Source: Basidiobolus meristosporus CBS 931.73 (Eukaryota; Fungi; Basidiobolomycota). From it: a stretch of DNA of 64,000 nt. A model generated the notes under the pieces. The model saw nothing but the letters and a program-made list of their open reading frames with translations. It was not told where the DNA came from and made no database searches. This document shows, one piece after another, positions 23,300-64,000 of this stretch. The DNA is taken from NCBI GenBank assembly GCA_002104905.1, contig MCFE01000303.1:35328-99327 (forward strand). The letters run 5' to 3'. Each line of letters opens with the position of its first letter. Position 1 is the first letter of the stretch. A program made the position numbers and the translations under genes.

Positions 23300-23431
23300 G
23301 TGGGTCATCATTGAATCTTACATTCATGTAGGTGCAATGTCTCAAATACAAGACTGTCTTAAGTTCACATGAGTATTGACCAAAAAGTGATATAATAGCA
23401 TTATGTTGTTGAAGGTCAAACTGTTTGCCCC

Positions 23432-25440: not shown

Positions 25441-25489
25441 AGTGGATGTGTTAGGAGATAGGAAGAAAAGTCAAGTTGCAGGTCCTTGT

Positions 25490-25615
25490 CATTAGTAATC
25501 ACTTGGCAATCAGGAAAAGTATTTTAGGGAAGTCAATCCCTCATCAATAAGTCATCCTTTCTATTATTAACACTTTCTCCTTATTGATTAATAGTTGATC
25601 ACTGCACCTGCCTTT
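25490..25615 (-). repeat. Diverged fragment related to the 1068-bp solo LTR
   Basis: Collinear similarity to 37977-38100 (ATTAGTAATCACTT...GAAAAGTAT...ATCCCTCA.CAATAA). Confidence 0.45.
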
Positions 25616-34055: not shown

Positions 34056-34059
34056 TGAC

Positions 34060-36221: not shown

Positions 36222-36598
36222 TATGGTGGTGTATAGGTACAAGGGAGAGATACATTCAACACTTCTCAAGTGCTTTGTGTGTGGGGTGTTCACTGGGTGC
36301 TATAACTTTAAGTAAAAGCTTGCCAGGAATACTTAGGTTCCATCTCTACTCAAGTGTGAACAGGAATAAAGCCACAAGTTTGTCAAGGGAAAACTATTGG
36401 GCCACAATCACCAATATAGTAGGCATCTTAACAAAAGTATGTGCTGGGCTCAGCATCCTTTCAGATGACAGTGTACTAATGCTTCCAACTTCAAAAATAC
36501 AGTAAGCTCTGCCAGCAGAGACCTGATTAGAATGCAGCCATTGTCATCAGTTACAAAGTCAGAAAAGTATCTTTGCCTGTACAAGAACAAACTTGGGA
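36222..36598. repeat. Truncated, diverged copy of the 1068-bp LTR
   Basis: Collinear with 22232-~22610; inserted in CACTA-like ORF2 and cut near the Harbinger-like end at 36615. Confidence 0.7.
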
Positions 36599-36614
36599 TA
36601 TAATTAAATATAAT

Positions 36615-38636: not shown

Positions 38637-38836
38637 AAATTAATCAGCTTGTATGTGTACCAATTAACCAAATTAATGAAGCAAGGAGGTAAGGAGTGTC
38701 AAAAAGATGCAAATGCCAACCAATTTACTCCAATACAAAAAGTGATTGAGGGTATACACGTAAAGAGTGAGAAAATTGCCAGAGAGGCAACTAAGAGCTG
38801 TAATGTTTGAGACTTGTTCCATTTTACCATTGCAGG

Positions 38837-41800: not shown

Positions 41801-43422
41801 CTGGTGGTAGGCTTACAGGCTCTTCTGGAAATACATCTGAATACTCCTTCAAAGAGTCTACTGATTTGGTCCAGAAGCTCAACAATCCAAGGTATGGGGT
41901 ACTTATTCTTCATGGTAAGTATGTTGAGGGCTCTGTGGTCAGTGAGTAATATGGTTAAATATGTGAGAGTTCCCATCCGCTGTTGAGACTGAAGCTGATT
42001 TGATAGGACCAAGTTGATTCCAGCTTTCAAAGCAAATTATTCTGACACTTACTCATGCAATGCTCCTGAGTCAATCATGATCTTGGCAGGTACTCCATTG
42101 ATTACTCCATTCAAGTATAATAGCTTCCCTGAGTTTGAGGTCATCTGGGATAGGTATTTCTCTGTCATACAGAAGGTAAGTTCTGAGTCTTCTTCAAGTT
42201 CATCCTCTGTGTTACTATGCTCTTTGGCTTCAATATGGTTCTTAATCACTGGTGTCCATTTCTTCTCTGAGGGCAGTACTTTGCAACATGTCCCTACTGG
42301 TGGCAATTGAAGCAAAGTCCTTTCTTCTTGCATTCTTCCAAGGTAGGATTCTTCTGCATAGCATCTATTTCCATTGGCACTGCTTCTGATTGTCTTCTTT
42401 CATAGTGATTGTAGCCGCTCTGATTAGTCATTGTAGGCTTCCCAACTCCAAACATAGTTGAGTCATAGTCAATGGCAATCATAATAGCTTCTTCAATAGT
42501 CTGAGGTCTTTGATAATTCCCTTCCTACAAGTTCTTTCTTTCAACCCATCAATAAAGTGTTCAACTTGATCCAGAGGGTCCATTCTTTCAATTTGCCCAA
42601 GTAGACATCTATATTCATAGATGTACTCTTGGACCATTCCTTTCTGTCTAAGTGTCTTCAACGTTCTTCTCAGTAGTGTCTGCTGGTGTGGGTGCTCAAA
42701 GGCATCCTGAATTTCCAACACAAACTCATCACAGGTAGGGATTGTAGAGCATCCCATCATAGTGGCTGACCTGATCTTGTTGTGGTACCACTGTAAAGCT
42801 ACATCTGTCAGGTAGGAGGTTGCATAATATAACTTGCTTTCTGGAGCAATTCTCTTAGCCTTGAGAGCTTCTTCAATCTGGTAGAGCCAAGTTCCCAGGT
42901 TTTCATTGACTCTACCATGATACTGGTTGACCTTCACGCTAAAGTTGCCCTTGACAGGGTTTTGCTGGCTTTGGGCCATGGTAGTCATTCCTTGTTGCTG
43001 CTAGGCCAGGATTTGTTGCATAGCATTCTTCCATTCTTGATGTGTGGACATCTTGAGGGGGGCTTCTTCTTTCTTCAGGAGGGAGGTTTCTGGTTATTGT
43101 TGCTACCAATGTTACAAGTCTTGGTATAAGAGTTGTAGTGGAATAGGGAGTTTACCTAGTAATGTATTCACTAAAACTTGAACTGATATTTATCAAGATT
43201 CCAGCAGCTTCTTATATACATTTTGCCATATCAATTGCTGACTAATTGTTTTTAATAATGTAGGCTGTGGCTGATGACTCATTTGATTACATTATCATCT
43301 GCCAATAAGATCCTACTTAATATATTTACTTCTATCTGATAAGGCTTGGCTGACTCATTTGCTGACTAATGCTACTGATTCAACTAAAAACTAATCTAAC
43401 TCAAACATTCAAGTGGTAGATT
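38837..43422 (-). mobile_element. Ty3/Gypsy retrotransposon Gypsy-3 (old, degenerate)
   Basis: LTRs 38837-39200 and 43110-~43422; PBS TGGTAGCA (tRNA-iMet-like, 43101-43108); purine tract at ~39203-39216. The right boundary is approximate. Confidence 0.88.
39291..43051 (-). pseudogene. Gypsy-3 gag-pol remnants
   Basis: gag 42479..42988, knuckle [33 protein letters not shown], integrase WGINF..RL; many stops and frameshifts. Confidence 0.88.
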
Positions 43423-45328
43423 TTAACAGTACTATATGGGTAAATCTTTCTTACTCTGAACAGATCTGGCTTATTGAGGCTGGCATGGATGATTATTACA
43501 GCATGTTATAGTTGATTCATATATACACTCAGATATAACTATTTTAGTAAGTAAAATCTGATTTAGGGATATTTTTCTTAAATATGAATGGAAATAAATG
43601 AGTAGTACATGCTAAACTGTATTAAAACTTACTCTATTGGTTGCCATCACTATACTAGAGTGATGTGTCTGTGGTGGATTTGTTTTAAAGTATCCTGAAG
43701 CTACAAGCCACCAATTGGCTCCTTTTCCAGTACACAAGCTACCTGATCTGCCATTAATTATCTTATTTTGTCTATGCTGCAAATAAGTCCCTGATATAAG
43801 TGATTGGACAAGGTGTCATAGCTAGCATACAACCAATTGGTTTTTGGCAATAAAAGTATAATGGCTGCAATGGTTTTACAGATGATGGATAAGTATGCAA
43901 GGTCTATATACATTGGTGTCCTGTCTCAAGTTTAAGACAACCTTGATATTACTTACATCAAGAATTTATTAATTGTTAGTGTACAGCGGTTTGATTGGGA
44001 TTGCAATGAAATGTGTTGTTTGGATCATGTCAAACAATAGTAATACAATGTGATTGTTTCATATTCTCCAAGTTTTTTCTTGCCAGAATTTCTACTGACC
44101 ATATGGTAGTGACTCACTTTGCACACATAAACTACTTTCTGTTTCACTTTAATCATGGCCACTTGTGTACTAATAGTCAACATCTTGCCTCCAAGTTAAG
44201 GAGTGCAGCACTGTAGCTTGGCTGTGCTGAGTTGCTCCAGAGGGTGTTACAGTACCACCCTGATGTGCCACATACTGGCACATTCCTTTATATGCCAAAG
44301 ACTCCAGTGGTGGAGGTACATCCAGTGGGTCTTTGTTGGTCAATTCTCCAGTAGGACCTTGCTGCTTTTGAGGTGTAACAGCACCAACAGGCACAATATG
44401 ACATACTGGCATAGCCCTAGGCTGATTTCAATGTGATGGGACATGTATATGCTGCTTGGCCAGCTCTGGCTTACTTGTGTCATATTGAGCAGTGTGGCAA
44501 GCTCTTGTACTCTAGCTCTGAACCATGCACATCAACCAAACACACTTTCACTTGGTGTATGGCACCATAGTCAAGGAAGCTGTTATATATTGAACCAACA
44601 TACTCTGGCACGTTGGATTGAAGGACATGGTAAGGAATCCAGTAAGATTTGCTGGCACAATCTGGATGCAGTTGCTCATGGTCTGTATTCTTCTTGAAGC
44701 CTACCTTCTGATTCATCAAGATATTTATTTGCCATTGTTAGACGCTTTAGATCTGCTGCCTTGAAGAGTTCATTATATTACTCTGACAAGCTACTTAGCT
44801 CTGATGATATATGACTAATAGCAATAGTTGTATGAGGCAAAAGCTTGTTCAAAATCTCCTTGACTCCCAGAGTGAAGGCACAATCAGATGCATCTAGTCT
44901 GTACTATGCAATTACTCACAAAATCATTTGCAGTCACCTTCTCCATTAAGTCTCCTCACTCTTAGCTCATTCTTAATTTCAAGACCGGAATATTTATTTA
45001 TGTTTTTAAATACATCTGCTGGCAACTTGATTTAGACTCTCCAAGGTATCCAGTTTTGCTAGATTAATGAGTGGTGGCAAATACCTGCATGAAGACTCAT
45101 CATAGACACATGGGCCTTACCAAAAGCATTTAGCTAATATGCTAAAGGATTTGAAATAGAGTCTTTCTGTAAAAACAAATTGTGTTAACCAGAGGATGGA
45201 TTGAGGGTGGGTGATACTAAAGATCATATAGTAGGCATAATGTGTCTTGTATTTTATTGGCACAAATCAGACCACATCAGTTGCAAATTTCCTACTTGAC
45301 CTGAGCCTTGCAGGTGATACATACTAAG

Positions 45329-48300
45329 TGTATGAGCGTACTGTGCATTAGTAAGTATCCTGACTATTTTACCTATTCTGCTGTTTTCTCATATATATGA
45401 CTTTCCTTTGTATTTACCTGCCAATATGCTGAATCTCTTCAGATATCCAAATGTGTGCTCTACCCTCACTCTGAAATGATAAAATATCTCATTTTAGAGC
45501 TTCTGCTTCCTGCTAAGCACCCCATTCCTTGGCTTCCTATAAGCTCTAATACATCCTAATCTCTGACAATCCTCTTCCATATAAGCTAAGTCTGCCATAC
45601 ATTTCTCCCCTCTACTGAATTCTGGATGATTCTCTACCCAGAGTGCTTTGTCATGCCTACTTCCAGCAAATGGCCCACTAAACCAGATGATGTTACCCTC
45701 AATGTCAGACAGTGCTTGAAACTTCACACAGTGTGCCTTGTACTTGCCAGAATAAAAGTGCCTCTACCCTCTAGAAGGTCTTTTGATCCTCACTGGGAAG
45801 GTATCCAAAATACTCTTCATATGGAACCTGTTGCTGAACACTCTGAGATATGGAAGTCCATTGGAGCTTCTGAACCTAGTATTCCAAGCTTGCTCTGAGT
45901 CATTCATACCCTCTGCAAGGTGGTTCTCCATTGCTGTCAGCTGAGAATGAAAGCTTCTAGGACTTTTGTTGCCATGGATGGTGCAATGAAACCTTGTAGG
46001 GCAATAGTTCTTGTAATAGCAGAGAAGCTTAACAAAGGATCTCCTTGAGTAGATTGGGGTAGATGGACCACAGTACTTGGTATAGATCTCCTTGAGTGTG
46101 TCAAAAGGAAATCCAGGGGTAGTGATGGGATTGATGAGAAAAGCCCATTCAGATGAGTAAGTCATATTAAAATTGAAAGGGATTGCGCTGAGATGATGTG
46201 AGTTGTTTTGGCACCATCAGCTTTATTTATCTGATTATCCATGCATTATGATTAAATCTCCATGAATTGCAATGTATCCCTTCATTATGTTGCAAAAATT
46301 ATCCTTAAACAATGACTGGGTATTTTTATTGATGTTTTACTCACAAGTCTATAAGCAAATAGGAAATCTGCAATTGATGTGATTGGATCTGTGTCAATGC
46401 AATCCAAGATGCATCATGCATAATATATGAAAAACTCAATAATCACATTAGTTTTCATATATATTTCATATAAGACCAGGTTGATGCCAATACACCACTG
46501 TATAAGAATCCAAATCCGTCACTATGGTCCCTATACCAAGTCTCAACTTATCTTTAGTCAATCCAGACAAAACCCATCCCCCAGTTCACAAGCATGATCC
46601 GGACTGGAAAAGGCAGTGTTGGATATATTTGAGTTCCTGCCAAATGATTTTGGTATGGCCCAAGTGTCTATGATGAGCTTTCATACAGATACTTGGGCAC
46701 TATTCATTGATCTAGCAGAACTAGATAGCCCAGAGAGTCAACAGAGATGGAAGAGCCTGAGTAGAAAGCTTTGGCATGAGTTCTATATCAAGATGCCAGC
46801 CAATGTATATAAGAAGATATATAACAAGACAAGTATTGAAATCAAGAATGAGCTGAAAGTGAGAGGATTTGATGAGAAAGCCATGCAGGAACAATTTTGC
46901 ACACAGATGCACAGCACTGGCCAGACACACCTGTTTTTGCCTTGACTTTGGAAACCAAAGAGATTTTGAATGAGTTTTTGCCTCAAATGACTAAAATAGT
47001 ATGTGATATAATAGTAGAGTTATGTGGCTTCCAAGAGCAATATACACAGGACTCATCCAGGCAGCAGTTGCAAAGTATTAGACAGAGGATAAGTGAATAC
47101 CTTGAGGAATCAGAAGGTGGGCTTCAAGGGGAGGAATATAGACCGCAAACAACATTGTCTAGATTGTGCAAGCATGCCTTGCTGGATTCCTTTCCATCCC
47201 TTGCAACTTCAGCACGCCAGTGCACGTCAGTCCAAACTATACCACCACCCTTCACAAGAGTGCCCCACATTGACTCAATGCGTATTGGGTCAGTGCGCTT
47301 GCTTTAGAGCAAAACCACCAGAACCCACCAAACTGCTAAAAAAGACACAAGTCCATTGGAGCAGGCCAAGTTGTGTCAACAAGCGGCATCACATTGAACT
47401 CAGCCAAGGGCCATGCCAGTGCATCAAGTCACATCTGCACAAGCTATTACACCTGACCATCAGCAAGTTTCTTCTGGTGAACTGACGGATGATGACCCAC
47501 ATGAAGTGCCTCCACTACCAGAGCCTTTGGAGAGTAAAAGAACACGTCAGCGTGTAGCACTGCAGGCCGGCTCAGTTGCATCATCCGGAGCAATTCAGTG
47601 CGGCCAAGCTGCAGCATTGCACTCATCAAATAGGAGGCAAAATACTGACTACAAATACACAAGTAGCCAAGAGTATAGTCAACAGGAAAGCAATTTAGGT
47701 GTGCAAAGTGAAGTACTACCAAATGCTTCAGTAGTAATCCCTGTGAGAAAAGAGCTTAGGAGACAATGAAGCATTTGCATTGAATTCCTATTATTTGTAA
47801 TGATCCAAACAACACATTTTTTTTGTGATCTGCATGGAGCCACCGCAAACCAGTGATCACTAAGTTTTTGATATAAGCAATATTAAGGCTGTCTCTCATC
47901 TGAGACAGGACCCCTATAAGTAAACACCATGCATATGTACATATCATCTGTGGCACCAGTGCAGCCATTTAATCTGGTTTGCACTCATACAACTGGTTGT
48001 GTGCTAGCTATGACACATTATCCAATCACTAGGTTCTGGGATTTACTTGCTTAATAGGCAAAATGGGATATTTGATGGGAAATCAGGTAGCTTGTGTATT
48101 GGTCAAAGAGCCAATTGGGGGCTGAAAGCTTCAGGATACTTTTGGACCAATTAACTGCTGAGATACCATCCAATTGGAGTGCTGGTAGCCAAAATGGTAA
48201 GTATTAGTGTAGTTTATAGTGTGATATGCATTTATTTCCATTTACATTAAAGAAATATTTCCAAATACCAGATTTTATCTACCATGATAGTGGTATCAAA

Positions 48301-48504
48301 TTGCGCACGTGATGCAAACATTACAAGTGGGTGCAATCATTTGTGCCAACCTCATTGTGTCAGATTATGCCATAGTGTGCAAGATTGTCCTACATTGTGC
48401 AAAATTGTCCAAGAGCAATCCTGCCTATTGGTAGCTACAATTTTGCTCCTGATTGTTCTTAGAGACCACAGATTGTGCTGTGCATAGTATGATGGAACAA
48501 GTTT
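45329..48504. mobile_element. Harbinger-like element copy D (left end missing)
   Basis: Collinear with 9680-11579 joined to 19095-20379; transposase pseudogene ~45390-46165 (minus), ORF2 pseudogene 46616-47769 (plus), right end ATGGAACAAGTTT at 48504. Confidence 0.88.
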
Positions 48505-48894
48505 AATGTGAAACCATCCAGAAGAACAAGTAAAGTATATGGATGAGAAGACATCATCCAGCGCATTAATGTGCCATCTTCCATCAATAAGCAAATTCTT
48601 GGAATAGATCTGGGCAATATTAAGCTGTTTTGTACTTTAATTTGCTCAACTTTGGCTTACTTTTGATAAGACCCTATGAGAAATAACGGAGATGATTGAA
48701 TCCATAGGCAGTTGCAAGATTACTGTTCCATGACTAAGCAGCATTGATGCTGTTGAGACACTATGCAAAGATTGTTTAGAACATGGCACCTCAGATTTCA
48801 GAAAAAGCTTGGTCAATATATATGTTACAATAAAATTTAAGTGGCCTTTTACAGGGTGTCCACCCATTCTCTCACTCAGTAATACTAAATACTC

Positions 48895-51800
48895 AATGAC
48901 CTCCCAAATTTGTGCACATTAATTGGCAATTGCTTCTTTTTCACCCTCCTTACTTCCTGACTCACACAATGCACTTATTTTCATGCACATCAGTTATCAA
49001 CGTTCCAGAATTCCACAGTAGGCATTGCAATAGTAGTTGAGCTATTAATGTTGTTGCTTTACTGTCAGTGTGATCCCTACTCTCACTACAATTGCAAATG
49101 TGAAGGTGGTGGTAGAATGTTTGCCTCTCTCTACAGCATACCCACCTCCCTCCCAGAGTGTAGATGAACTAACTGCACCTCCAACACTTGGAAAAGTAGC
49201 TCTTGTCTTACTGGTAATTTTTCTTGGCTATGATGGGACTCAGCCTGTTCTGGGCATAAGGCATTAATGGCAGAAACTGCAGCTCTTCACTTTTGCATGC
49301 CTGTTGCTGGCTTGGGTAGACTTTTAGCTTGGCTTATGGTATGCTGTCCTGGAGGCAATGGCATTCAAGACTTCTTACAGCCTCTTGAATATTATACCAC
49401 TCTTCATAATTACACTACATGGCCTTCTGGATGTTCACTGTCTTATAATTTTAAGGCTTGGGTATAAACAACACTATCTCTCCCTTCATTGCTCTGATAG
49501 GTTTCTCAGAGGGCTTTATCTTAAGGCACCGCTGTTGTCACTTAAAGACTGCATGATGCTCCTCTACTGTTACATTAGGAAGTGCCTAAGCTTGCAGCTG
49601 CAACACTCAATTACTTAAGTTATTTCTTTACAGCAATGATACTGCATTCTTGACTATGTATATTGAGTGTCCTACATGTATTATCTGCTCATTTCTGTTT
49701 CTATACTATTTCCTAACTTCTCTGGGCCATTGGATCTCCCTTATAAGCCACTGCACCTAGTTGCCTCATTAATGCTTTGGTATGAACTGACAAAATACTT
49801 GAACCAAAGAAACTATGCTTGCTACATTCACATCTGCCAAAGCATTTTGGTCAGCTTGCAGCTTCACAGAGGTTTTCAATTGCCTGCTTGACTGAGGGCC
49901 TAAGATGTCTGCATTATTACCTTCAGTGAGCACACTGCCCACATGGCCTTTTTTGGGGGTAGCCCCACTTGTTGCACTGAATATCAAAGCATGCTGATGT
50001 TCAACCATTCTGCTGCTATTGCTAGTGGGGTTGGGCTGGGAACCAGAAAACTTTGCTCTGTTTTCTGATGGCACATATATGTTTGTAAGTCAAAGCATAA
50101 GGGAAATAGCGTCAGGTACACATATATATATACTATCTCAACTTATTCATTATGCTTACTAAAGTGGGTCATCACTTGATTTACATTCATATAGATGAAA
50201 TGTCACAAATACAAGACTCTCTTTAATTGTCATGAGTATTGACAAAATAGTGGTATAATAGCATTACATTCCAGAGTGTAAAATGTATTGCCCTATGGAG
50301 AAGACTACATTGATTTAATACCATAAGAGAAGACAAGAAAGACGTTGCAGCTATTGTAACAGCCTCTCAGCCATGAAGCACGCAGAGAGCATAGGAGGTA
50401 TTGCAAGAATGACAGCCAGTGTTTTGCCACATAAGTTCTATTTGACCATCTAGTAGTCACTACTGCACCAACAATATCTTGCTGGCAGCTTGATACTTTT
50501 ATAACAACACCCAGACATACTTGTCACCTTACTCAATCTGAGTCAGGTGAGTTTGTGATGCCTTTAGGCTCACCTTGGCCTTCTGAATATGGCATGCAGA
50601 GTGATAGCTATGAAGGAAAAGGCTCACTGAGCAATTGTGAGCTTATCACCCCTAACAATGGTACCCTGCATGAGCCTGGCAAATTCATCTTATGCAATAA
50701 GACAACACTAGTGAAAAAGTGCCAAGAAAACATTATGGAGCTAAGTGAGCCCATTAAACAGTTTACTGGTGAATGATGTAATGTTGTGGCTAGAGAGGTG
50801 GTGTGGTTCCACCAATGTCAATAATGGGGGCTTTGAGGATTAATTACTACTTCTTGCCAAAATAATCCTGGGGTGATTCTTGCCATGAACATAATATAAA
50901 TGAAAAGCTGTCATGTAGCTGGCATTATATGTCCCAGAGACCATCATGATACCAGCATATGTCAGCAGTTGCATGGCAATCACATTGAATATGCCACCAT
51001 TGCAAGTTGTTGAAATAGTCAGGAATCAACCACCACAGAGGGAAAACATTTTTCTTGTTGTAGTTATATTGCAGAAATACCTGGTCTAAAGTAGCTCATG
51101 CAGTCTGACAAATTTTGTGAGACTATACATTACTGCACTCAGCATCAATCAAGCACAAATATTTCTGATATATTTGATGCCAAACATTACAGACAAATAA
51201 GATTCAAGGGCTGCTCTGAAGGAATGTATAACCATGCTTTTGCCTTGGCACTTGATGGATTATCATTAATCAAATACTGTGCCAACAAATGCCTCTGGCC
51301 TCTTATTCTTGTCAACCTGAAACAGCCACCTATCCCACATCATCAGAGCAGAAATCTGATGGTAGTCTCACTGTTATTTGAGCCAAAATCACTATCCAGC
51401 CTGAATAGCTACCTAAATTCATTGCTGAATGAACTTTGTATGCTTTCCAGCAGGATTATACCTAGTGTCTGTCATATTAGAACACATTATTTTTTGTGTT
51501 GGAGATATTCTTACCCTCAGCAAGATAGCCTGCTTTGCTGATTGCAATGGATGGTTTAACTATTGAACGTGTGAGATGCCAGGATTTACTCAGTAACTGA
51601 CCAAATTATTACTATCCAAACACCATCACTGAAAGCATCAAATGTAGGTGCAAAAGCTCTCCATTGGGAGCAATGCATTTGCTGGCCTCAGCGGAGGATA
51701 CTGCATTTGCTACATTCTCATATGTCTGAGCATAAGAGTCAGCTTGTGGCTCTGCAGAGGTTCTCAATTGCCCACTTGACTGAGACACTGAGGAGTCTGT

Positions 51801-54232
51801 ATTATTACCTTCAGTGGGCACACTTTTAACATGGCCTTTTTTGGATGTAGCCACACTTGTTGCACTGAACATCAAAGTAAGCTACTTTCCCACCATTCTT
51901 CTGCTGCCATCAGCAGTGGGGTTTAGTTGAGAACCAGACAACTTTGCTTTAATTTTTGGAGGCATATATATGGAAGTGAGTCAAATCAGTGGGTAAATGG
52001 TGTTACATATTCATCTGTATCTGGTGCCACAACTGTATTTATAATGCTTACTATGGTGGGTCATCATTGAGTCTTACATTGATGTAGGTGCAATATCTCC
52101 AATATAAGACTGTCTCAAACTCACATGAGTAGTGATAAAAAAGTGATATAATAGTGTTGTGTTGTCAAGTGTCAAGCTGTTTGCCCCATGGACAAGACTG
52201 CTTTAATTCAATGCCATAAGACAAGAGAAAAAAGACCATGTGGCTATTATGATAAGCCTCGCAGCCATGAAGCACACAGACAACATGGGATGCATTGCAA
52301 GGATCATAGCCAGTGTTTTGCCACACAAGTCATATTTGACCATTCATCAGTCACTATTTGCCACTACCACATTGTTGGCCACTTGAGATTTCCACAATGG
52401 CACCTGGCCACACTTGTCACCTTGTGCAACTGAGTCATATGAGCTTGCAACACCTTTAAGCTCACCTCAGCCTTGTGAATATGGCATGCAGAATGATAGC
52501 TCTGAAGAAGAAGGCTCATGGATGGACTGTGAGCCAATCTCTCCTGACTGCAGTAGGAAATAATGCAAAGGATACTTTATGGAGCCAAGTGAGCCCAGTA
52601 ATCCATCTACTTGGGCATGATGTGGTATGGAGGCTACAGAAGTGACATATATCTACTAATATCCATAATGGGGGCTTTGAGAATTTACCTTTACTTCTAG
52701 CCAAAATTTGCAGGGTTACAACTCACCATGCACATGACACATATGAGCAACTGTCATGCAGCTGGCAACATATGACACAGAGACTGTGCTGATACCAGCA
52801 TGTGTTAACTGTTGCATGGCACTCACATCAGAAAATGCCACCATTGCAAGGTGTCCAACATGCCAGGAATACTCTACCATTGGAAGAAATTATTGTTCAT
52901 GCTCCAGATATATTCCGGCAATACCCTGTCTAAAGAAGCTAATGCTGTCAAACAAATACTGTGAGGCTTTAGAGTGCCACACTATGTATTGATCAGGCAT
53001 AAACATTTGCAATATAATTGATGGCTAACATTACAAAATACTAAGAAGCAAGTGCTACTTTGAAGGTATGTACAAGCATGCCTTTGCCCTTTAAAATACT
53101 GAAGAAATTTGAAATAACTCGCCAGATGTTGCAGAGTATCTGCTACACAAGGTATTGCTCATGGGTTTTAATCAATGTTCATATGCATATGCAACAATAT
53201 AAACTCAAGAACTGGATACACTGCATATATATTTACTCAAGTGGCCTTCTGAGGTCATTTCTGCCATGAGTTAATGGGAATCATTGGGAGTCATATGTTG
53301 ACATTGTGGAATATTTATCTGGATGCAGATCACCAATACTTAATTGGTGTATTTATAGCTTTTATGCTCAAAGTTTGAGATGGGATATGAGCTGCTACAC
53401 TATAAGCATAAAGCTGAATGTGTAGATCTCTGCCACTATTGTATCCATTCTATACTCCATCTTAATTGGTTTGTTGTGTGGGGGAGATAGGGAGACAAGT
53501 GAAGTTTTAGGTAATACTATATCCCAATCTCATCAACAACTCTACCTTCAAATCTGACATGGATGTAATGAGTGGAACATGGAGGACAGCCAGGAAGAGT
53601 TGGAAAATACTGAGGACAGATGTGTATATGAAGACACCTATGCCTATGGTATTAAGATGCCAAGCAGTCCCAATGCATGAATAATGAGCCAAGCAATGCA
53701 AAGTTGGGATGGGTGCAACAATCCACTAACTTTTATTAGGAATGCTCTACCAAGATATGCTGTATATCTCTTGGTCACAAGCCAATTTCTACACCATTCA
53801 ATACAGAACTCACACAAGCAAGAGCCAGAGCACACCTATAAGGGGGATTAGAATCCAGCAGGGAAAAGGAATATATTGGCTCAATACCAGATATTTCTTG
53901 AGGTACTCATGGTAAAGGTGGCAGCAGCCTAGTATATGTTTGTAACCTGAATATGATGCCACCAATGCAAGGTATATGGCAACTTTGCAAGTGTACTCTA
54001 AAAGTTGTAAAGTGGAGGTGATGGAAATGCATCAATTGCAGCAGGCCTGCACATATGTGGAGGTTAGTAAGCAGGAGGCCATAGTTATTTTGATTTAAAC
54101 TACATGGGGAATATGCATGGTAGTAGTGGTTAAACAAATAATGAGGGGTGATTCTATAGTTGTAATATGAATAGCACCAAGGGAGGTAGAAAAAGAAACC
54201 AGCAATTGGTAAATTAGTATGGTAGCAATATA
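48895..54232. mobile_element. Two partial, degenerate CACTA-like units in tandem
   Basis: ORF2 remnants 49190-50090 and 51690-51965 (minus); transposase remnants 50295-51590 and 52188-53500 (plus); 53530-54232 matches 25830-26170. Confidence 0.75.
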
Positions 54233-54443
54233 CCCTATAAAAAATTATTGAGATGATCCCATCAAAAGCTTGTCACAAAGTTAAAGTCCCCTGACTAAGA
54301 GGTACTGATCCTGTCAGGACCGTTGAAAAATAATTGCACCCCAGATTTCACAAAAAACTTAGTCAAAATTTTTCATCACAACAATGTATTTGTGGCTTTT
54401 GGTTGGTTCCCTGCTGATTTGCTCACTTTCTGATCCTGGATAC

Positions 54444-57400
54444 TGTTGAAACATTGGACTATTTGGTATCATTCAGCAGCTAAAAATTTACTTAACAATT
54501 CTAGGCTAGTCTTAGTTGCTGTAGGACTCATTTACTGCCATTACTTTTCCACTTTCTCCAGATATATAATCTTATGATTATTCCCCTATAGTCAGGATCA
54601 AATTAGCACTATTACCAAATATTATGTACTAACCCTGAAACTGTTTCAGAATGCTCCTGAATATTGAGAAACCCTCCCTACTTAGTGTTGCAGCTGTATT
54701 ACTTCTACAATGGTATAAATACTGAGCTTCCTTATGAATAAACCACAGTTCAACTATTATCACTATTTCTTGATAAGTTCCTTATATCCAAATCACTTCT
54801 TAAATTGCAACAGGTTATGAGCCCCAATTGCCTTAATCTATTCTCAAGATGACTTCTACCAGCAAACAAAGCAATACCAACATCTTCCCTGTAAAGGAGA
54901 GGTTTGATGGGAAGAACTACAGACTTTGGAGAATCAAGATGCAGATCAACCTTGAGGAAAGAAAGCTTTGGAACATAGTAACAGGAAAGGAAGTTGAGCC
55001 CAAAGGAACAGCAGAAGATGTGGAGAAGTTTCAAGAGAAGGAGAGAAAGGCCTTCAGTGCAATATGCATCAACGTGCAAGACTCCTTCATTTGGACAAAT
55101 CCATGCCTCAAATATTGCCAAAGCAGCATGGGAATCCTTAGAGAAGATCTTTAGAGCAAAGTCAGTATCAAGCAAGCTTTATTTGAGACAAAAGTTCTTC
55201 AACATGAGAAAAAAGCCAGATGATGACATGCTACAACTCATTACCAGAATGGAGACACTTGCAGAAGAACTTTACAGTATTAATGCTGGTGTAGATGATG
55301 AAAAAAAGATACTCTGTCTGCTTTGCAGCCTACCAGACAAGTATGAGCCACTCATACTTTCTTTTGAAAGCAGAGAAGACAACTCGACTTTAGACTATGT
55401 CAAAGGAAGACTTCTCCATGAAGAACTCAGACGTAATTGTGAAGCAGAGAAAATTGAAGATAATGCTTTAATCAGTTCAGAAAGGCATACAGAAAAGAAG
55501 GGAAAGCAACAAAACCAAAGAAAACCTGGCTGCTGTAGCTACTGTAAGAAGCCAGGACACTGGGCAAGAGAATGCAAAAAGAAACAAGCAGACGAAAACA
55601 GAAACTAGAGCAGGCAAACCATATAACTACTGATGAACAGTTATTTGTCACTGTACAAGAGAGTGCAAGTAACCAAAGTAGTGAATGGTATATTGACTCT
55701 GGAGCATCACAGCATATTTGTGGTATAAAGGATTGGTTCAGCAACTTAAAGACTATTCCCGTAAGAAAGGTTTATCTGGGAGATATCTCTGCATTGGAAG
55801 CTACCGCCAGTGGGTCTATACAGCTAAATATGAGTGACAACTCAGGAGCAACAACAGCAAAACTGACTGACATACTCTATGTACCTGGAATAGCTAAGAG
55901 CCTACCCTCAGTCAGTAAAGCAACTATTCAGGGACTGAAATTTGTATTTACTAAGCTGAGCTGCTCAATATTGAGTGAAAATGGACAAAAATTAGCTTTG
56001 GGAATCAGAGATCACAATATATACAAGTTACAATGCAAGATCATTGTACCTGAGTATGTCAACATTGCTGAAACCGATGAAACCAACTGGGAGACGTGGC
56101 ATAGGAGGCTAGGACACATAGGGGAACAGAAAATGAGCCAATTGGTGAAAAATCAGCTTGTTTTGGGCCTAAAATACTCAATTCCAATCAAATTGAATGT
56201 TTGTAAAGGATGTTCATATGGCAAACAAGCTAGGCAACGTTTCAAGAGCTCAGAAGGCATCAATACCACCAAAATATTGGCTATTGTACACTTAGACATA
56301 TGTGGCCCCATGAGAATACTGTCCTTTGGAGCCAAGAGATACTTTATGACATTTATTGATGACAAGACAAGATATACATGGGTGTACTTCCTCAAAATAA
56401 AGGATGAAGCTTTAGAGACGTTTAAGCACTTCAAGAACATGGCAGAAACACAAACTGGGTGTAAATTGAAGGTACTACAAAGTGACAATGGAGGAGAATA
56501 CTGCTCAAAGGAGCTTGCAAAATACTGCTTGTCTACTGGTATACTTCAACAGACCACAGTTCCTCATACTCCACAGCAAAATGGAGTAGCAGAACGTGCA
56601 AATAGAACAATAGTAGAGATGGGAAGATCTATGCTACATGATAAGGGAATGGACTATAAGTTTTGGGCTGAATCTGTTGCTACCGCTGTATACATCAAGA
56701 ACAGATGCCCAACAACAGCACTACGTGATTCTACACCCTTTGAAGCATATACAGGCAAAAAACCAGATCTCCAGCACCTCAGGATCTTTGGCAGTGATGT
56801 TTTTTATCACATCCCTGACAAAAAACGCTCAAAGTTGGAACCAAAGAGTAGAAAAGGGATCTTTCTTGGGTATTGTGAAGATACTAAAGGGTATAGAGTG
56901 TATGATGGCAAAATCCAGAAGCTGATCAAGAGCAGGGACGTTGTATTTAAGGAGAATTCAGATCAGAAAGCCACAGAAATCATTGGCCAGCTGCCTGATG
57001 ATGCAATCAACACAAATGAAAAAGATACAATCCAAATTGAGCCAGAGATGGAAGATACTTCTACCAGTTCCAGATCAGAACATATTATCCCAGTTAGGAG
57101 ATCTACCAGAATAAGAAATGCCCCTGGATCCTGGTGGCAGACATCCAATGATCATGAAGAAGCTTATCTTGCCTTATGTGCCAAACCTCAGAATCTGGAA
57201 CAGGCAATGCAAGGTCCAGATGCTACTAAGTGGCAACAAGCCATGCAGGAGGAGTACCAATCACTGATCAAGGCAAAAACGTGGGAACTGGTAGATTTAC
57301 CAAATGGGAGAAAGCCAATAGGATGCAGATGGGTCTACAAGATCAAGATTACCTCAAATGGTGCCGTTGATAAGTACAAGTCTAGATTGGTAGCTAAAGG

Positions 57401-58688
57401 CTATTCCCAGATCCAGGGACTAGACTTTAAGCAAACATTTGCTCCGGTTGCCAAGTTTAACTCTATTAGGACAGTTCTAGCCCTGGCAGCTGTACAGAGT
57501 CTAGATCTACACCAAATGGACATCAATACAGCCTTTCTAAATGGGGATTTGCAAGAAACAATATATATATGGAGCAACCAGAAGGTTTTACCAATCCAAA
57601 AACCCCCCATAAGGTGTGCAAACTTAGAAAATCATTGTATGGGCTTAAGCAGGCACCCAGAGCATGGTATAACAAGATTGACACATATCTAGAGGAAATT
57701 GGGTTCTCTTGTAGCACTGCAGATCACAGTATATATTTGAAACAACTCAAAAAGGGTGTGATCATCCTAGTTCTTTATGTGGATGACCTAATTATAGCTA
57801 CAAGTGATCAAGAGGCACTTAAACAGACGAAATCGGATCTCTTCAACCCCTATGGACAATAACCTGAAATTAAGCAAATCTCAGCCAGTTATAGATGAAA
57901 ACAGCTCAAATATGGACCAAAACTTTCCCTATCAATCAATAGTTGGTAGCCTAATGTACTTGATGGTGTCTACACGTCCAGATATTGCAGTAGCAGTTGG
58001 AATAGTCAGTCAACTCATGCAGAATTATGGATCAGATCAAATTGCAGCAGTTAAGCGGATTTTCAGATATCTACAAGGTACCATAAATATGGTACTGGAA
58101 TACTCTGGAGCAGCTAATAGGCGAGAATTTGATGGTTATAGTGATTCAGATTGGGGTAGGGATCTGATTGACAGATGCTCTACCACAGGCTATGTATTTC
58201 TTTATGCTGGTGCAGCTATTACTTGGAATTGTAAGAAACAACCAACTGTGGCACTATTTACAACTGAAGCCAAATATATGGCGGCATGTCAGGCAACTAA
58301 GGAGGCTATATGGCTATGAAAATTATTCAAAGACTTAGGTTTTAATTCAGGTGAACCAACATGTATTTACAAGGATAATCAAAGTTGTATTTCATTAGCT
58401 AGAAATCCTACTAATCATGCCAGAACTAAGCACATTGATATAGAGCATCACTTTGTGAGGGAAGCTGTAGAAAATTACTTAGTGGAGCTGGTTTACTGCC
58501 CAACTGACAAAATGGTGGCAGACATATTGACAAAACCACTAGCTAGGCCACAGTTTGAGATCCTTAGAGAGAAATTGGGATTAAGAAATTATTTAGTTGT
58601 GGAGGAGTGTTGAAATATTGGACTATTTGGTATCATTCAGCAGCTAAAAATTTACTCAACAATTCTAGGCTAGTCTTAGTCACTGTAG
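54444..58688 (+). mobile_element. Ty1/Copia retrotransposon Copia-1 (degenerate, 3' LTR truncated)
   Basis: 5' LTR 54444-54812, PBS GGTTATGAGCCC 54813-54824, 3' LTR only 58608-58688; INT precedes RT. Confidence 0.95.
54849..58607 (+). pseudogene. Copia-1 gag-pol pseudogene
   Basis: Frameshifts near 55090, 55595 and 57568, a 155-bp deletion at 57844 relative to Copia-2, and CGA->TGA at 58317. Confidence 0.92.
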
Positions 58689-59390
58689 TCTTACTTTTCA
58701 TGAGTACAAATTGACTTATTTCCGTTGAAACTTCAGTTATACCTCACTTGCCAATAGTATTGACCTATACAAGTCCCTATACCCTACACTATCATTAAGC
58801 CCAACCCCACACTCAACAAGTAACTCCATCAAAATCTACCACTCAATAAATATTTCTGCTCTGACATTCTGATTACACAACTTTAGTGGGAGCCCAACAA
58901 CTTTATGCTACTGTTCATTCACTGGTTCCCACACATCCTGTTCTTCAGCCAGCACCGCAATGTCTAGCACCTCAGCTGCCAGTCTTTGCAATAAATCCTT
59001 GCAATATTCCAGTGAGTTTTCTGTTGAAATATTGGACTATTTGGTATCATTCAGCAGCTAAAAATTTACTTAACAATTCTAGGCTAGTCTTAGTCACTGT
59101 AGGACTCATTTACTGCCTTTACTTCGCCACTTTCTCCAGATATATGATCTCATGATTATTCCCCTATAGTCAGGATCAAATTAGCACTATTACCAAACAT
59201 TATGTACTAACCCTGAAACTGTTACAGAATGCTCCTGAATATTGAGAAACCCTCCCTACTTAGTGTTGCAGCTGTATTACTTCTACAAAGGTATAAATAC
59301 TGAGCTTCTTTATGAATAAACAACAGTTCAACTATTATCACTATTTCTTGATAAGTTCCTTATATCCAAATCACTTCTTAAATTGCAACA

Positions 59391-59402
59391 GGTTATGAGC
59401 CC
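59391..59402 (+). promoter_or_regulatory. Half-tRNA-iMet primer binding site (Ty5/copia type)
   Basis: GGTTATGAGCCC directly after the LTR, complementary to GGGCUCAUAACC in the anticodon arm of yeast-type initiator tRNA. Confidence 0.8.
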
Positions 59403-59426
59403 CGATTGCCTTAACCTATTCTAAAG

Positions 59427-62400
59427 ATGACTTCTACCAGCAAACAAAGCAATACCAACATCTTCCCTGTAAAGGAGAGGTTTGATGGGAAGAACTACAG
59501 ACTTTGGAGAATCAAGATGCAGATCCACCTTGAGGAAAGAAAGCTTTGGAATATAGTAACAGGAAAGGAAGTTGAGCCCAAAGGAACAGCAGAAGATGTG
59601 GAGAAGTTTCAAGAGAAGGAGAGAAAGGCCTTCAATGCAATATGCATCAATGTGCAAGACTCCTTCATTGGACAAATCCATGCCTCAAATACTGCCAAAG
59701 CAGCATGGGAATCCTTGGAGAAGATCTTTAGAGCAAAGTCAGTATCAAGCAAGCTTTATTTGAAACGAAAGTTCTTCAACATGAGAAAAAGCCAGATGAT
59801 GACATGCTACAACTCATTACCAGAATGGAGACACTTGCAGAAGAACTTTACAGTATTAATGCTGGTGTAGATGATGAAGAAAAGATACTCTGTCTGCTTT
59901 GCAGCCTACCAGACGAGTATGAGCCACTCATACTTTCTTTTGAAAGCAGAGAAGACAACTTGACTTTAGACTATGTCAAAGGAAGACTTCTCCATGAAGA
60001 ACTCAGACGTAATGACCAAGCAGAGAAAATTGAAGATAATGCTTTATTCAGTTCAGAAAGGCATACAGAAAAGAAGGGAAAGCAACAAAACCGAAGAAAA
60101 CCTGGCTGCTGTAACTACTGTAAGAAGCCAGGACACTGGGCAAGAGAATGCAAGAAGAAACAAGCAGACGAAAAACAGAAACTAGAGCAGGCAAACCATA
60201 TAACTACTGATGAACAGCTATTTGTCACTGTACAAGAGAGTGCAAGTAACCGAAGTAATGAATGGTATATTGACTCTGGAGCATCACAGCATATTTGTGG
60301 TATAAAGGATTGGTTCAGCAACTTAAAGACTATTCCCGTAAGAAAGGTTTATCTGGGAGATAACTCTGCATTGGAAGCTACCGCCAGTGGGTCCATACAA
60401 CTAAATATGAGTGATAACTCAGGGGCAACAACAGCAAAACTGACTGACGTACTCTATGTACCTGGAATAGCTAAGAACCTACTCTCAGTCAGTAAAGCAA
60501 CTACTCAGGGACTGAAATTCGTTTTTACTAAGCTGAGCTGCTCAATATTGAGTGAAAATGGACAAAAATTAGCTTCGGGAATCAGAGATCACAATATATA
60601 CAAGTTACAATGCAAGATCATTGTACCTGAGTATGTCAACATTGCTGAAACCGATGAAACCAACTGGGAGACGTGGCATAGGAGGCTAGGACACATAGGG
60701 GAACAGAAAATGAGCCAATTGGTGAAAAATCAGCTTGTTTTGGGCCTAAAATACTCAATTCCGATCAAATTGAATGTTTGTAAAGGATGTTCATATGGCA
60801 AACAAGCTAGGCAACGTTTCAAGAGCTCAGAAGGCATCAATACCACCGAAATATTGGCTATTGTACACTCAGACATATGTGGCCCCATGAGAACACTGTC
60901 CTTTGGAGCCAAGAGATACTTTATGACGTTTATTGATGACAAGACAAGATATACATGGGTGTACTTCCTCAAAACAAAGGATGAAGCTTTAGAGACGTTT
61001 AAGCACTTCAAGAACATGGCAGAAACACAAACTGGGTGTAAATTGAAGGTACTACGAAGTGACAATGGAGGAGAATACTGCTCAAAGGAGTTTGCAAAAT
61101 ACTGCTTGTCTACTGGTATACTTCAACAGACCACAGTTCCTCATACTCCACAGCAAAATGGAGTAGCAGAACGTGCAAACAGAACAATAGTAGAGATGGG
61201 AAGATCTATGCTACATGATAAGGGAATGGACTACAAGTTTTGGGCTGAATCTGTTGCTACCGCTGTATACATCAAGAACAGATGCCCAACAACAGCACTA
61301 CGTGATTCTACACCCTTTGAAGCATATACAGGCAAAAAACCAGATCTCCAGCACCTCAGGATCTTTGGCAGTGATGTTTTTTATCACATCCCTGACAAAA
61401 AACGCTCAAAGTTGGAACCAAAGAGTAGAAAAGGGATCTTTCTTGGGTATTGTGAAGGTACTAAAGGGTATAGAGTGTATGATGGCGAAATTCAGAAGCT
61501 GATCAAGAGCAGGGACGTTGTATTTGAGGAGAATTCAGATCAGAAAGCCACAGAAATCATTGGCCAGCTGCCTGATGATGCAATCAACACAAATGAAGAA
61601 GATACGTACCAAATCCAGCCAGAGATGGAAGATACTTCTACCAGTTCCAGATCAGAACAGATTATCCCAGTTAGGAGATCTACCAGAATAAGAAATGCCC
61701 CTGGATCCTGGTGGCAGACATCCAATGATCATGAAGAAGCTTATCTTGCCTTATGTGCCGAACCTCAGAATCTGGAACAGGCAATGCAAGGTCCAGATGC
61801 TACTAAGTGGCAACAAGCCATGCAGGAGGAGTACCAATCACTGATCAAGGCAAAAACGTGGGAACTGGTAGATTTACCAAATGGGAGAAAGCCAATAGGA
61901 TGTAGATGGGTCTATAAGATCAAGATAACCTCAAATGGTGCCGTTGATAAGTACAAGGCTAGATTGGTAGCTAAAGGCTATTCCCAGATCCAGGGACTAG
62001 ACTTTAAGGAAACATTTGCTCCGGTTGCCAAGTTTAACTCTATTAGGACAGTTCTAGCCCTGGCAGCTGTACACAGTCTAGATCTACACCAAATGGACGT
62101 CAAAACAGCCTTTCTAAATGGGGATTTGCAAGAAACTATATATATGGAGCAACCAGAAGGTTTTACCGATCCAAAAAGCCCCCATAAGGTGTGCAAACTT
62201 AGAAAATCGTTGTATGGGCTTAAGCAGGCACCCAGAGCATGGTATAACAAGATTGACACATATCTAGAGGAAATTGGGTTCTCTCGTAGCACTGCAGATC
62301 ACAGTATATATGTGAAACAGCTCAAAAAGGGTGTGATCATCCTAGTTCTTTATGTGGACGACCTAATTATAGCTACAAGTGATCAAGAGGCACTTAAACA

Positions 62401-63343
62401 GACGAAATCAGATCTCTTCAGCAAGTTTGAGATGAAAGATCTTGGAAAATTGAGCTATTTTCTTGGAATTGAGGTCAAATTTGACATACCTACGCAGAAA
62501 ATTGTGCTGAATCAGTCTAAGTACATCAGGGACATTCTTAGACGCTTCAAAATGGAAAATTGCAAACCTGCAGCAACCCCTATGGACAATAACCTGAAAT
62601 TAAGCAAATCTCAGCCAGTTATGGATGAAAACGGCTCAAATATGGACCAAAACTTTCCCTATCAATCAATGGTCGGTAGCCTAATGTACTTGATGGTGTC
62701 TACACGTCCAGATATTGCAGTAGCAGTTGGAATAGTCAGTCAATTCATGCAGAATTATGGATCAGATCAAATTGCAGCAGTTAAGCGGATTTTCAGATAT
62801 CTACAAGGTACCATAAATATGGTACTGGAATACTCTGGAGCAGCTAATAGGCAAAAATTTGATGGTTATAGTGATTCAGATTGGGGTAGAGATCTGATTG
62901 ACAGACGCTCTACCACAGGCTATGTATTTCTTTATGCTGGTGCAGCTATTACTTGGAATTGCAAGAAACAACCAACTGTGGCACTATCTACAACTGAAGC
63001 CGAATATATGGCTGCATGTCAAGCAACTAAGGAGGCTATATGGCTACGAAAATTATTCAAAGACTTAGGTTTTAATTCAGGTGAACCAACATGTATTTAC
63101 AAGGATAATCAAAGTTGTATTTCATTAGCTAGAAATCCTACTAATCATGCCAGAACTAAGCACATTGATATACAGCATCACTTTGTGAGGGAAGCTGTAG
63201 AAAATAACTTAGTAGAGCTGGTTTACTGCCCAACTGACAAAATGGTGGCAGACATATTGACAAAACCACTAGCTAGGCCACAGTTTGAGATCCTTAGAGA
63301 GAAATTGGGATTAAGAAATTATTTAGTTGAGGGGGAGTGTTGA
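59427..63343 (+). CDS. Copia-2 gag-pol polyprotein with a single frameshift
   Basis: ORFs 59427..59870 and 59804..63343; knuckle CNYCKKPGHWAREC, PR YIDSGA, GAG-pre-integrase WHRRLGH, integrase SDNGGE, RT YVDD, RH YSDSDW. The A-run at 59786-59790 is one base shorter than in Copia-1. Confidence 0.93.
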
Positions 63344-64000
63344 AATATTGGACTATTTGGTATCATTCAGCAGCTAAAAATTTACTTAACAATTCTAGGC
63401 TAGTCTTAGTCACTGTAGGACTCATTTACTGCCTTTACTTCGCCACTTTCTCCAGATATATGATCTTATGATTATTCCCCTATAGTCAGGATCAAATTAG
63501 CACTATTACCAAACATTATGTACTAACCCTGAAACTGTTACAGAATGCTCCTGAATATTGAGAAACCCTCCCTACTTAGTGTTGCAGCTGTATTACTTCT
63601 ACAAAGGTATAAATACTGAGCTTCTTTATGAATAAACAACAGTTCAACTATTATCACTATTTCTTGATAAGTTCCTTATATCCAAATCACTTCTTAAATT
63701 GCAACATTTCTTGACCACTACTCCTGAAGTAGATGCTGCAACCTCTTGGTGCTGCCATGATTAATGTTCCAAATACTCTACTGAAGGCATTGTGATATAG
63801 ACTTTAGCTCTTGACATTGTAGCCTTGTCTATCAGGTGAGGATCTCCACTCATGCTCAACAATGCAGATATGGAGGCTGTGGTAGATGCAATTACCTTTT
63901 TCGCTAAACTCATCTACCTTGCTGGAGTGTAGCTCAACAGGCTTTACTTCCAACTCTTGTGAAAATGGCTGTTTTCTTGTTGGTAATTCTACTTATCTAT

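What the first reader, a model, noticed from the sequence alone, without database searches (positions are those of the whole stretch)
54849..63343. TpCpG-biased C->T hypermutation of repeats (RIP-like or methylation-driven genome defence)
I compared the two Copia copies by hand and found about 28 CpG sites that differ by a transition (CG vs TG/CA) and about 19 CpG sites shared. Roughly 21 of the 28 mutated sites carry TCG or CGA, against 3 of the 19 retained (e.g. CTACGAAG>CTACAAAG, GCTTCGGG>GCTTTGGG, CTCGTAG>CTTGTAG). This suggests a 5'-T preference rather than uniform CpG decay. TpCpG-biased repeat mutation is known from Pucciniomycotina basidiomycetes, while classical ascomycete RIP targets CpA. 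If this genome lies outside those groups, it may be an undescribed repeat-silencing mutator. A context-biased methyltransferase plus passive deamination would look similar.
Basis: partly seen in the sequence, partly recalled or inferred. Interest (0 to 1): 0.78.

Follow-up and report, generated by a model that had tools for sequence, protein, structure and literature searches.

The report
TCG-biased CpG hypermutation in Basidiobolus repeats
In this early-diverging fungus (Basidiobolus meristosporus), transposon copies lose almost every cytosine that sits in a T-C-G context while nearby genes keep theirs. This mutational scar was so far reported only from rust and anther-smut fungi.

Summary

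- **Copia pair:** copy A (54444-58688, broken) and copy B (59022-63706) differ at 109 of 4242 aligned sites. With B as the ancestral proxy, A lost 17/22 TCG cytosines, 8/41 ACG, 1/19 CCG and 0/6 GCG. It lost only 29/1597 non-CpG cytosines. TCG therefore mutated about 80 times faster than non-CpG cytosines.
- **Polarity:** outgroup Copia proteins support B's residue at 11 CpG-linked amino-acid changes and A's at none.
- **Within single CpG pairs:** the T-flanked strand mutated 16 times and the other strand 3. In other repeat families the count is 11 to 0.
- **Composition:** old repeats keep 6 TCG among 232 CpG cytosines. Unique DNA has 369 among 1066.
- **Organism:** Basidiobolus meristosporus CBS 931.73, outside Dikarya.
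- **Literature:** I found the TpCpG signature reported only for Pucciniomycotina.

The most likely mechanism is mutation dependent on 5-methylcytosine and targeted to silenced repeats. A homology-triggered RIP-like process is not excluded. I class it as a new member of a known kind.

The scan found the same signal before on other DNA of this genome (s1-218914, s1-216331, s1-243054).

The parts
54444..58688 (+). Copia copy A: old, broken, TCG-hypermutated. The 5' LTR is 54444-54812. The 3' LTR is cut to an 81-nt stump at 58608-58688. It has a 155-nt deletion and small indels.
   Evidence: A lost 17/22 TCG cytosines relative to B. Its ORFs are fragmented.
58689..59021 (.). Fragment of another repeat, 89% identical to 9117-9436. 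It separates A's LTR stump from copy B.
59022..63706 (+). Copia copy B: young. Its LTRs (59022-59390 and 63338-63706) differ at 1 of 369 sites. It has a 1179-aa pol ORF at 59804-63343 and retains 24 TCG cytosines.
   Evidence: RVT_2, rve, gag_pre-integrs, Retrotran_gag_2.
20001..54400 (.). Old nested repeats (CACTA/tnp2-type, LTR elements and others). CpG O/E is 0.08 and TCG is almost erased: 6 of 232 CpG cytosines.
9678..11580 (.). PIF/Harbinger-type DNA transposon copy (DDE_Tnp_4), paired with 45329-47228 at 90% identity. Its CpG pairs with one T-flanked C mutated on the T side 3 times and on the other side 0 times.
11581..19089 (+). Young Gypsy element with LTRs 99.5% identical. It is still CpG-rich (O/E 0.63, 100 TCG), so it serves as an unmutated young-repeat control.
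1..7000 (.). Unique genic DNA (BolA, GH8 and other genes). CpG O/E is about 0.7 and TCG is the commonest NCG.

Best explanation
**What is shown.** Copia A is an old, dead insertion that decayed in place. Copia B is a much younger insertion of the same family nested next to it, and it still approximates the ancestral sequence.

In A, cytosines in T-C-G were converted to T on both strands about 80 times faster than non-CpG cytosines. A-C-G mutated about 12 times faster, C-C-G about 3 times, and G-C-G showed no mutations in 6 sites.

The older repeat families in the window, DNA transposons included, show the same hierarchy. Unique genic DNA does not.

**What is inferred.** Repeats are marked by CpG cytosine methylation. 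Funabiki et al. (eLife 2023) list DNMT1, UHRF1 and two Dim-2-like methyltransferases for this species and detect no RID/DNMT4 and no DNMT5.

The methylated cytosine is then turned into thymine by a step that strongly prefers a 5' T. That step could be enzyme-assisted deamination, flank-dependent repair failure, or polymerase error at T-5mC-G.

The outcome is irreversible inactivation of silenced repeats. The signature matches the 'RIP-like' TpCpG hypermutation of Pucciniomycotina, but here it occurs in Basidiobolomycota.
For: - Per-site rates and Fisher tests.
- Polarity from outgroup proteins: B's residue is supported 11 times and A's 0 times at CpG-linked changes.
- Within single CpG pairs the T-flanked strand mutated 16 times against 3 in Copia, and 11 against 0 in other families.
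- TCG was lost on both strands, 5/6 on plus and 12/16 on minus.
- Old repeats hold 6 TCG of 232 CpG cytosines. Unique DNA holds 369 of 1066, p = 3e-29.
- Young repeats (Gypsy, Copia B) are still CpG-rich although repeated.
- B lies 333 nt from A, is 97% identical over 4.2 kb, and is unmutated.
- The change is restricted to CpG, with no CpA excess.
- DNMT repertoire from the supplement of PMC10538959.
- 5mC is confined to repeats in other early-diverging fungi (PMC11258239).
Against: - No methylation data exist for this locus, and I found no published 5mC map for this species.
- Symmetric CpG maintenance methylation does not by itself explain a T-side bias of at least 5-fold within a CpG pair.
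- An 80-fold excess is well above the roughly 10- to 20-fold excess usual for passive 5mC decay. The latter figure is from my own knowledge of mammalian and plant rates.
- The quantitative rates rest on one pair of copies. The rest of the window supports them through composition and a few dozen sites.
- Genome-wide copies could not be fetched.
Confidence: 0.6

Rival explanations
1. A true RIP-like process. Duplicated DNA is recognised through homology around the sexual cycle, and TCG cytosines in both copies are mutated in bursts, independently of stable methylation.
For: - The signature is identical to the one called RIP-like in Pucciniomycotina.
- The 80-fold excess and near-saturation in copy A look like hypermutation rather than slow decay.
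- Two Dim-2-like genes are listed for this species.
- From my own knowledge, DIM-2 drives a RID-independent RIP route in Neurospora.
Against: - Copy B, 333 nt away and 97% identical over 4.2 kb, keeps its TCGs.
- The young Gypsy element keeps CpG O/E 0.63.
- No RID/DNMT4 was detected according to PMC10538959.
- VCG sites decay too, in a graded T>A>C>G series.
- An earlier follow-up on other DNA (s1-218914) reports that near-identical gene duplicates keep their CpGs. I did not check this.
Confidence: 0.25
2. Sunlight-driven mutation. A cyclobutane dimer forms between T and 5mC at methylated TCG, deaminates rapidly, and is copied as TT.
For: TCG is the fastest-deaminating CPD context, and UV mutations are 3- to 5-fold enriched there in yeast and melanoma (PMC12887450). 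This would explain why a 5' T is needed on the same strand.
Against: - There is no dipyrimidine excess at non-CpG cytosines: YCH 16/829 against RCH 13/768, p = 0.85.
- CCG is no more mutated than ACG.
- I saw no CC>TT tandem changes.
- Unique DNA keeps its TCG.
Confidence: 0.06
3. APOBEC-like editing of retroelement cDNA during reverse transcription.
For: The changes are C>T transitions with a 5' T preference in a retrotransposon.
Against: - Both strands are hit: 5/6 plus and 12/16 minus.
- TCA, TCC and TCT are not elevated.
- DNA transposons (DDE_Tnp_4 and tnp2 families) show the same loss.
Confidence: 0.02
4. Chance, alignment artefact, or selection on the active copy.
For: Only one pair of copies gives the quantitative rates.
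Against: - p = 4e-7 survives correction for 16 contexts.
- Seven of the CpG changes in the ORF are synonymous.
- Independent families and window-wide composition agree.
Confidence: 0.01

Closest known systems
TpCpG 'RIP-like' hypermutation of Pucciniomycotina (Microbotryum, Puccinia, Melampsora, Rhodotorula; Hood 2005, Horns 2012, PMC3318451)
   Same: - C>T at T-C-G on both strands in repeats.
- TCH is not elevated.
- VCG is moderately elevated over VCH.
- Young or expanding copies carry few hits.
- No RID homologue is present, and the only candidate enzymes are of the DNMT1 class.
   Different: - The host is Basidiobolomycota, an early-diverging lineage outside Dikarya.
- Dim-2-like genes are listed in addition to DNMT1.
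- Old repeats here go on to lose nearly all CpG (O/E 0.03-0.15), not only TCG.
Classical RIP of Pezizomycotina (Neurospora; RID and DIM-2)
   Same: Irreversible C>T mutation of repeated DNA that spares genes.
   Different: - The target here is CpG/TCG, not CpA.
- No RID is reported for this species.
- A closely linked 97% identical duplicate is untouched.
Passive 5mCpG decay in methylated transposons (Agaricomycotina, Tuber, plants, vertebrates)
   Same: It is restricted to CpG, repeat-specific and age-dependent. Active lineages stay CpG-rich.
   Different: There is a strong dependence on the 5' flank within the same CpG pair, and a much larger rate excess at TCG.
T[C>T]G at methylated sites in POLE-exonuclease mutant tumours (PMC5737810) and at UV photodimers (PMC12887450)
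   Same: The same trinucleotide, and in both cases 5mC or CpG context boosts the change.
   Different: These are somatic processes in cancer or UV exposure. They show no repeat specificity and carry accompanying signatures (TCT>TAT, dipyrimidine C>T) that are absent here.

Membership tests
TpCpG RIP-like hypermutation (Pucciniomycotina type) | Per-site C>T rate at TCG exceeds that at VCG and TCH | tested here: met
   TCG 17/22, ACG 8/41, CCG 1/19, GCG 0/6, TCH 10/499. Fisher p = 4e-7.
TpCpG RIP-like hypermutation (Pucciniomycotina type) | Affects repeats and not single-copy DNA | tested here: met
   By composition only. Unique DNA has 369 TCG of 1066 NCG and old repeats have 6 of 232. No polymorphism data for unique DNA were available.
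TpCpG RIP-like hypermutation (Pucciniomycotina type) | Seen across several TE families and on both strands | tested here: met
   Copia, PIF/Harbinger, CACTA-type and other families. Both strands are affected.
Classical RIP | CpA (or CpT) dinucleotide preference | tested here: not met
   NCA 15/623 against 14/974 for the other non-CpG contexts, with all the excess at CpG.
Classical RIP | Both members of a linked duplication are mutated | tested here: not met
   Copy B is 333 nt from A and 97% identical, and it keeps 24 TCG. B may simply be too young, so this weakens the reading but does not exclude it.
Classical RIP | RID/Masc1 (DNMT4) methyltransferase present | not tested
   Listed as not detected for B. 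meristosporus in the supplement of PMC10538959. I could not search the proteome myself.
Classical RIP | Acts premeiotically on duplications | not testable with these tools
   Needs crosses or transformation.
5mC-driven CpG decay | Mutation confined to CpG in silenced repeats, increasing with age | tested here: met
   CpG O/E runs 0.63 (young Gypsy), 0.26 (Copia B), 0.15 (Copia A), 0.08 (old repeats).
5mC-driven CpG decay | 5mC actually present on the repeats | not testable with these tools
   No methylome was available. DNMT1, UHRF1 and Dim-2-like genes are listed in PMC10538959.
5mC-driven CpG decay | Little dependence on the base 5' of the CpG | tested here: not met
   Within CpG pairs the T side mutated 16 times against 3 and 11 against 0.

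The most novel reading that the evidence does not exclude
Basidiobolus and Pucciniomycotina share an ancient, enzyme-driven T-C-G cytosine mutator. It would be tied to DNMT1 or Dim-2-class methyltransferases and would predate Dikarya. That would make it a second fungal genome-defence system, distinct from RID-dependent RIP, rather than a side effect of methylation.
Probability: 0.2. Interest if true: 0.8.

Novelty: new member of a known kind. Interest (0 to 1): 0.55.

Why it matters
The TpCpG signature has been treated as a peculiarity of one basidiomycete subphylum, and its mechanism is unknown. RIP-type mutation is said to have been observed only in Dikarya (PMC11105155).

Finding the same signature in Basidiobolus has two consequences. 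First, it is either much older than thought or it arises repeatedly wherever a DNMT1-type system silences repeats. Second, it cannot depend on RID.

Basidiobolus is culturable. From my own knowledge it also forms zygospores readily. It is therefore a second, distant system in which to ask what makes T-5mC-G so mutable.

In practice, CpA-based RIP indices would miss this process, and TE dating in this genome must mask CpG and TCG sites.

Tried and rejected
- **More copies of these families from the genome.** Exact look-ups of the Copia, Gypsy and transposase ORFs found no record. Word searches with the Copia and Gypsy polyproteins found nothing above about 50% identity. The TE region carries no gene calls in the public annotation. 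A genome-wide spectrum was therefore not possible.
- **Majority consensus of the old multi-copy families.** The consensus had already lost all TCG.
- **CpG-aware reconstruction from TG/CA mixtures.** It gave a T-side to V-side count of 38 to 36. That count is forced towards equality by how sites are ascertained and by inherited subfamily changes, so I discarded it. Among sites that still have CG in one copy, the T side wins 11 to 1.
- **Longer motif.** No TCGA requirement emerged. There is a possible extra T at position -2, but too few sites to judge.
- **cDNA-editing and UV readings.** Rejected, or down-weighted, by the strand and dipyrimidine tests.
- **Accession search in papers.** It found nothing.
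- **One literature search for a Basidiobolus methylome.** It returned only unrelated papers.
Full report
**Anatomy**

Self-comparison of 54-64 kb shows two copies of one Copia family.

- **Copy A** runs 54444-58688. Its 5' LTR is 54444-54812. Its 3' LTR is cut after 81 nt (58608-58688). It carries a 155-nt deletion and small indels, and its coding region is split into several ORFs.
- **Copy B** runs 59022-63706. Its LTRs are 369 nt and differ at a single site. It has a 1179-aa ORF with RVT_2, rve, gag_pre-integrs and Retrotran_gag_2 domains.
- **The 333 nt between the copies** resemble 9117-9436. The sequence after B resembles 20382-20650.

So A, a fragment of another repeat, and B are successive nested insertions, with A the oldest. 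They are not a tandem with a shared LTR.

**The observation**

A and B align over 4242 sites with 109 mismatches: 82 transitions and 27 transversions.

Each C/T or G/A difference was assigned to the trinucleotide of the C-bearing allele and normalised by conserved sites:

| Context | Mutated | Kept |
|---|---|---|
| TCG | 19 | 2 |
| ACG | 9 | 23 |
| CCG | 2 | 8 |
| GCG | 0 | 4 |
| non-CpG contexts | 0-6.5% mutated | |

TCG against the other CpG contexts gives Fisher p = 4e-7.

**Polarity**

Seventeen of the 19 TCG differences have CG in B and TG or CA in A.

I aligned B's protein with twelve distant Copia polyproteins (about 45-50% identity). At CpG-linked amino-acid differences the outgroups support B's residue 11 times, A's 0 times, and tie 5 times. 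One apparent 'TCG in A' is a derived T>C change in A.

Most non-CpG replacement changes are also derived in A (25 against 2). A therefore carries most of the divergence, and B is a fair proxy for the ancestor.

**Rates, with B as ancestor**

| Context | Lost in A | Rate relative to non-CpG C>T |
|---|---|---|
| TCG | 17/22 (77%) | about 81-fold |
| ACG | 8/41 (20%) | about 12-fold |
| CCG | 1/19 | about 3-fold |
| GCG | 0/6 | none seen |
| non-CpG | 29/1597 (1.8%) | 1 |

- TCG against ACG gives p = 1e-5.
- Both strands are hit: 5/6 on plus and 12/16 on minus.
- No TCGA requirement is seen.
- There is no dipyrimidine excess at non-CpG cytosines: YCH 16/829 against RCH 13/768, p = 0.85.

**The bias acts on the cytosine, not on the CpG pair**

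Twenty-two CpG pairs in B have a T 5' of the cytosine on exactly one strand. The T-flanked strand mutated in 16, the other strand in 3, one changed to TT, and 2 are intact (binomial p = 0.004). Of the 22 pairs with no T flank, 6 mutated and 16 are intact.

In all other repeat pairs of the window at 80% identity or more, the same test gives 11 on the T side and 0 on the other. These include a PIF/Harbinger DNA transposon (DDE_Tnp_4) and CACTA/tnp2-type elements. The only 2 intact pairs lie in the 99.5%-identical LTRs of a young Gypsy element.

**Window-wide composition**

| Region | CpG O/E | TCG among NCG cytosines |
|---|---|---|
| Unique genic DNA (14.6 kb, including 5.8 kb fetched upstream) | 0.72 | 369 of 1066 (35%), the commonest NCG |
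| Young Gypsy element | 0.63 | 20% |
| Copia B | 0.26 | 25% |
| Copia A | 0.15 | 15% |
| Old repeats, 20-54.4 kb | 0.08 | 6 of 232 (2.6%) |

Unique DNA against old repeats gives p = 3e-29. Relative to unique DNA, the count of each context in the old repeats is 0.02 for TCG, 0.25 for ACG, 0.34 for CCG and 0.38 for GCG. This is not corrected for the different lengths of the two regions. It is the same T>>A>C>G order as in the Copia pair.

TCG is more mutable after normalisation, and unique DNA does not show the depletion.

**Organism**

The GH8 gene of the window lies on NCBI record MCFE01000303.1 of assembly GCA_002104905.1. An intronless gene just upstream on the same 99,327-nt contig is ORX91845.1 of Basidiobolus meristosporus CBS 931.73. 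NCBI places the species in phylum Basidiobolomycota. This agrees with earlier notes of the scan.

**Literature**

- TpCpG hypermutation was described in Microbotryum and then in all four Pucciniomycotina examined. It was not found in Agaricomycotina or Ustilaginomycotina. The authors noted that known methylation patterns do not explain the 5' T and that no rid-like gene is present (PMC3318451).
- Later papers still call the bias specific to Pucciniomycotina (PMC4014442; PMC12730594 of December 2025).
- Amselem et al. link CpG-type TE mutation to Masc2/DNMT1-class enzymes (PMC4352252).
[quoted passage not shown] It offers only dinucleotide-index hints in that order (PMC11105155).
- My searches found no report for Basidiobolus.
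- The supplement of PMC10538959 lists for B. meristosporus DNMT1 (ORX99839), two Dim-2-like proteins (ORX98566, ORX84408), UHRF1 and HELLS. It lists DNMT3, DNMT4 (the RID class) and DNMT5 as not detected.
- 5mC is confined to repeats in Phycomyces and Linderina (PMC11258239).

**Mechanism**

Four things are shown:
- a CpG-restricted, repeat-restricted and age-dependent C>T process;
- it acts on both strands;
- it has a strong 5'-T preference at the level of the single cytosine;
- it affects retroelements and DNA transposons alike.

The rest is inferred. The restriction to CpG and the listed DNMT1/UHRF1 set point to 5mC as the substrate.

The bias within a CpG pair and the 80-fold excess go beyond what symmetric methylation plus spontaneous deamination would give. 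The 10- to 20-fold usual excess is from my own knowledge. A flank-selective step must therefore be added. It could be methyltransferase- or deaminase-assisted deamination, flank-dependent failure of T:G repair, or polymerase error at T-5mC-G. The last occurs in POLE-exonuclease mutant tumours (PMC5737810).

A homology-triggered RIP-like process remains possible. Several points speak against it:
- the untouched copy B lies 333 nt from A;
- the young Gypsy element is still CpG-rich;
- the decay of VCG sites is graded;
- no RID is reported.

An earlier follow-up on other DNA (s1-218914) reports that near-identical gene duplicates keep their CpGs. I could not check this.

UV photodimer deamination at TCG (PMC12887450) is not supported by the non-CpG spectrum. 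cDNA editing is excluded by the strand symmetry and by the DNA transposons.

**Limits**

- The quantitative rates come from one pair of copies.
- The rest rests on composition and a few dozen sites in one 64-kb window.
- No further copies could be fetched.
- No methylation data were available.
- I did not search the DNMT repertoire myself. It is taken from a paper.

**Verdict**

The reading is supported as a TpCpG-biased, repeat-directed hypermutation signature, with the mechanism unresolved between its two arms.

It is a new member of a known kind, found in a lineage far from where it was known. The same signal was already noted by this scan on other pieces of this genome (s1-218914, s1-216331, s1-243054, s1-197575), which fits a genome-wide process.

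Noticed in passing
window 7000-9100: CpG density collapses at about 7200-7500 (O/E 0.78 falls to 0.10). This is more than 1.3 kb before the first sequence with an in-window repeat match (9117) and just after the last called gene. It is either spreading of the process into flanking DNA or an unrecognised repeat end.
   Followed up: partly
window 54517-54518 / 58681-58682 / 59095-59096: A's 5' LTR reads TG where A's 3' LTR stump and B's LTR read CA. This implies an ancestral CG hit independently on opposite strands. A's 3' stump is also closer to B's LTR (1 difference) than to A's own 5' LTR (4 differences in 81 nt).
   Followed up: partly
window 9633-10556 (- strand): An intact PIF/Harbinger-type transposase ORF (DDE_Tnp_4) lies in a stretch with 0-1 CpG per 500 nt. 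The reading frame survived near-complete CpG loss. It was also noted earlier as s1-199563.
   Followed up: partly
window 59427-59870 and 59804-63343: In the 'intact' copy B, the N-terminal part of gag lies in a separate overlapping ORF. The long ORF matches only positions 100-170 of the gag profile. B also has two 1-nt gaps relative to A near 59668 and 59787. B may therefore carry a frameshift in gag, or use a frame change.
   Followed up: no
window 58689-59021 and 63707-63994: Copia B is inserted inside a fragment of the CACTA-like family, which itself interrupts Copia A's 3' LTR. The flanks match 9117-9436 and 20382-20650. This gives a relative order of insertions.
   Followed up: partly
window 59017-59021 / 63707-63711: The 5-nt flanks of copy B (TTTTC and TTTCT) are not an exact target-site duplication.
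   Followed up: no
window 22231-23303 vs 37525-38600: This inverted pair is 96% identical, yet all 12 of its CpG sites differ between the copies and none is shared. It has no TCG at all. CpG turnover is complete at under 4% divergence.
   Followed up: partly
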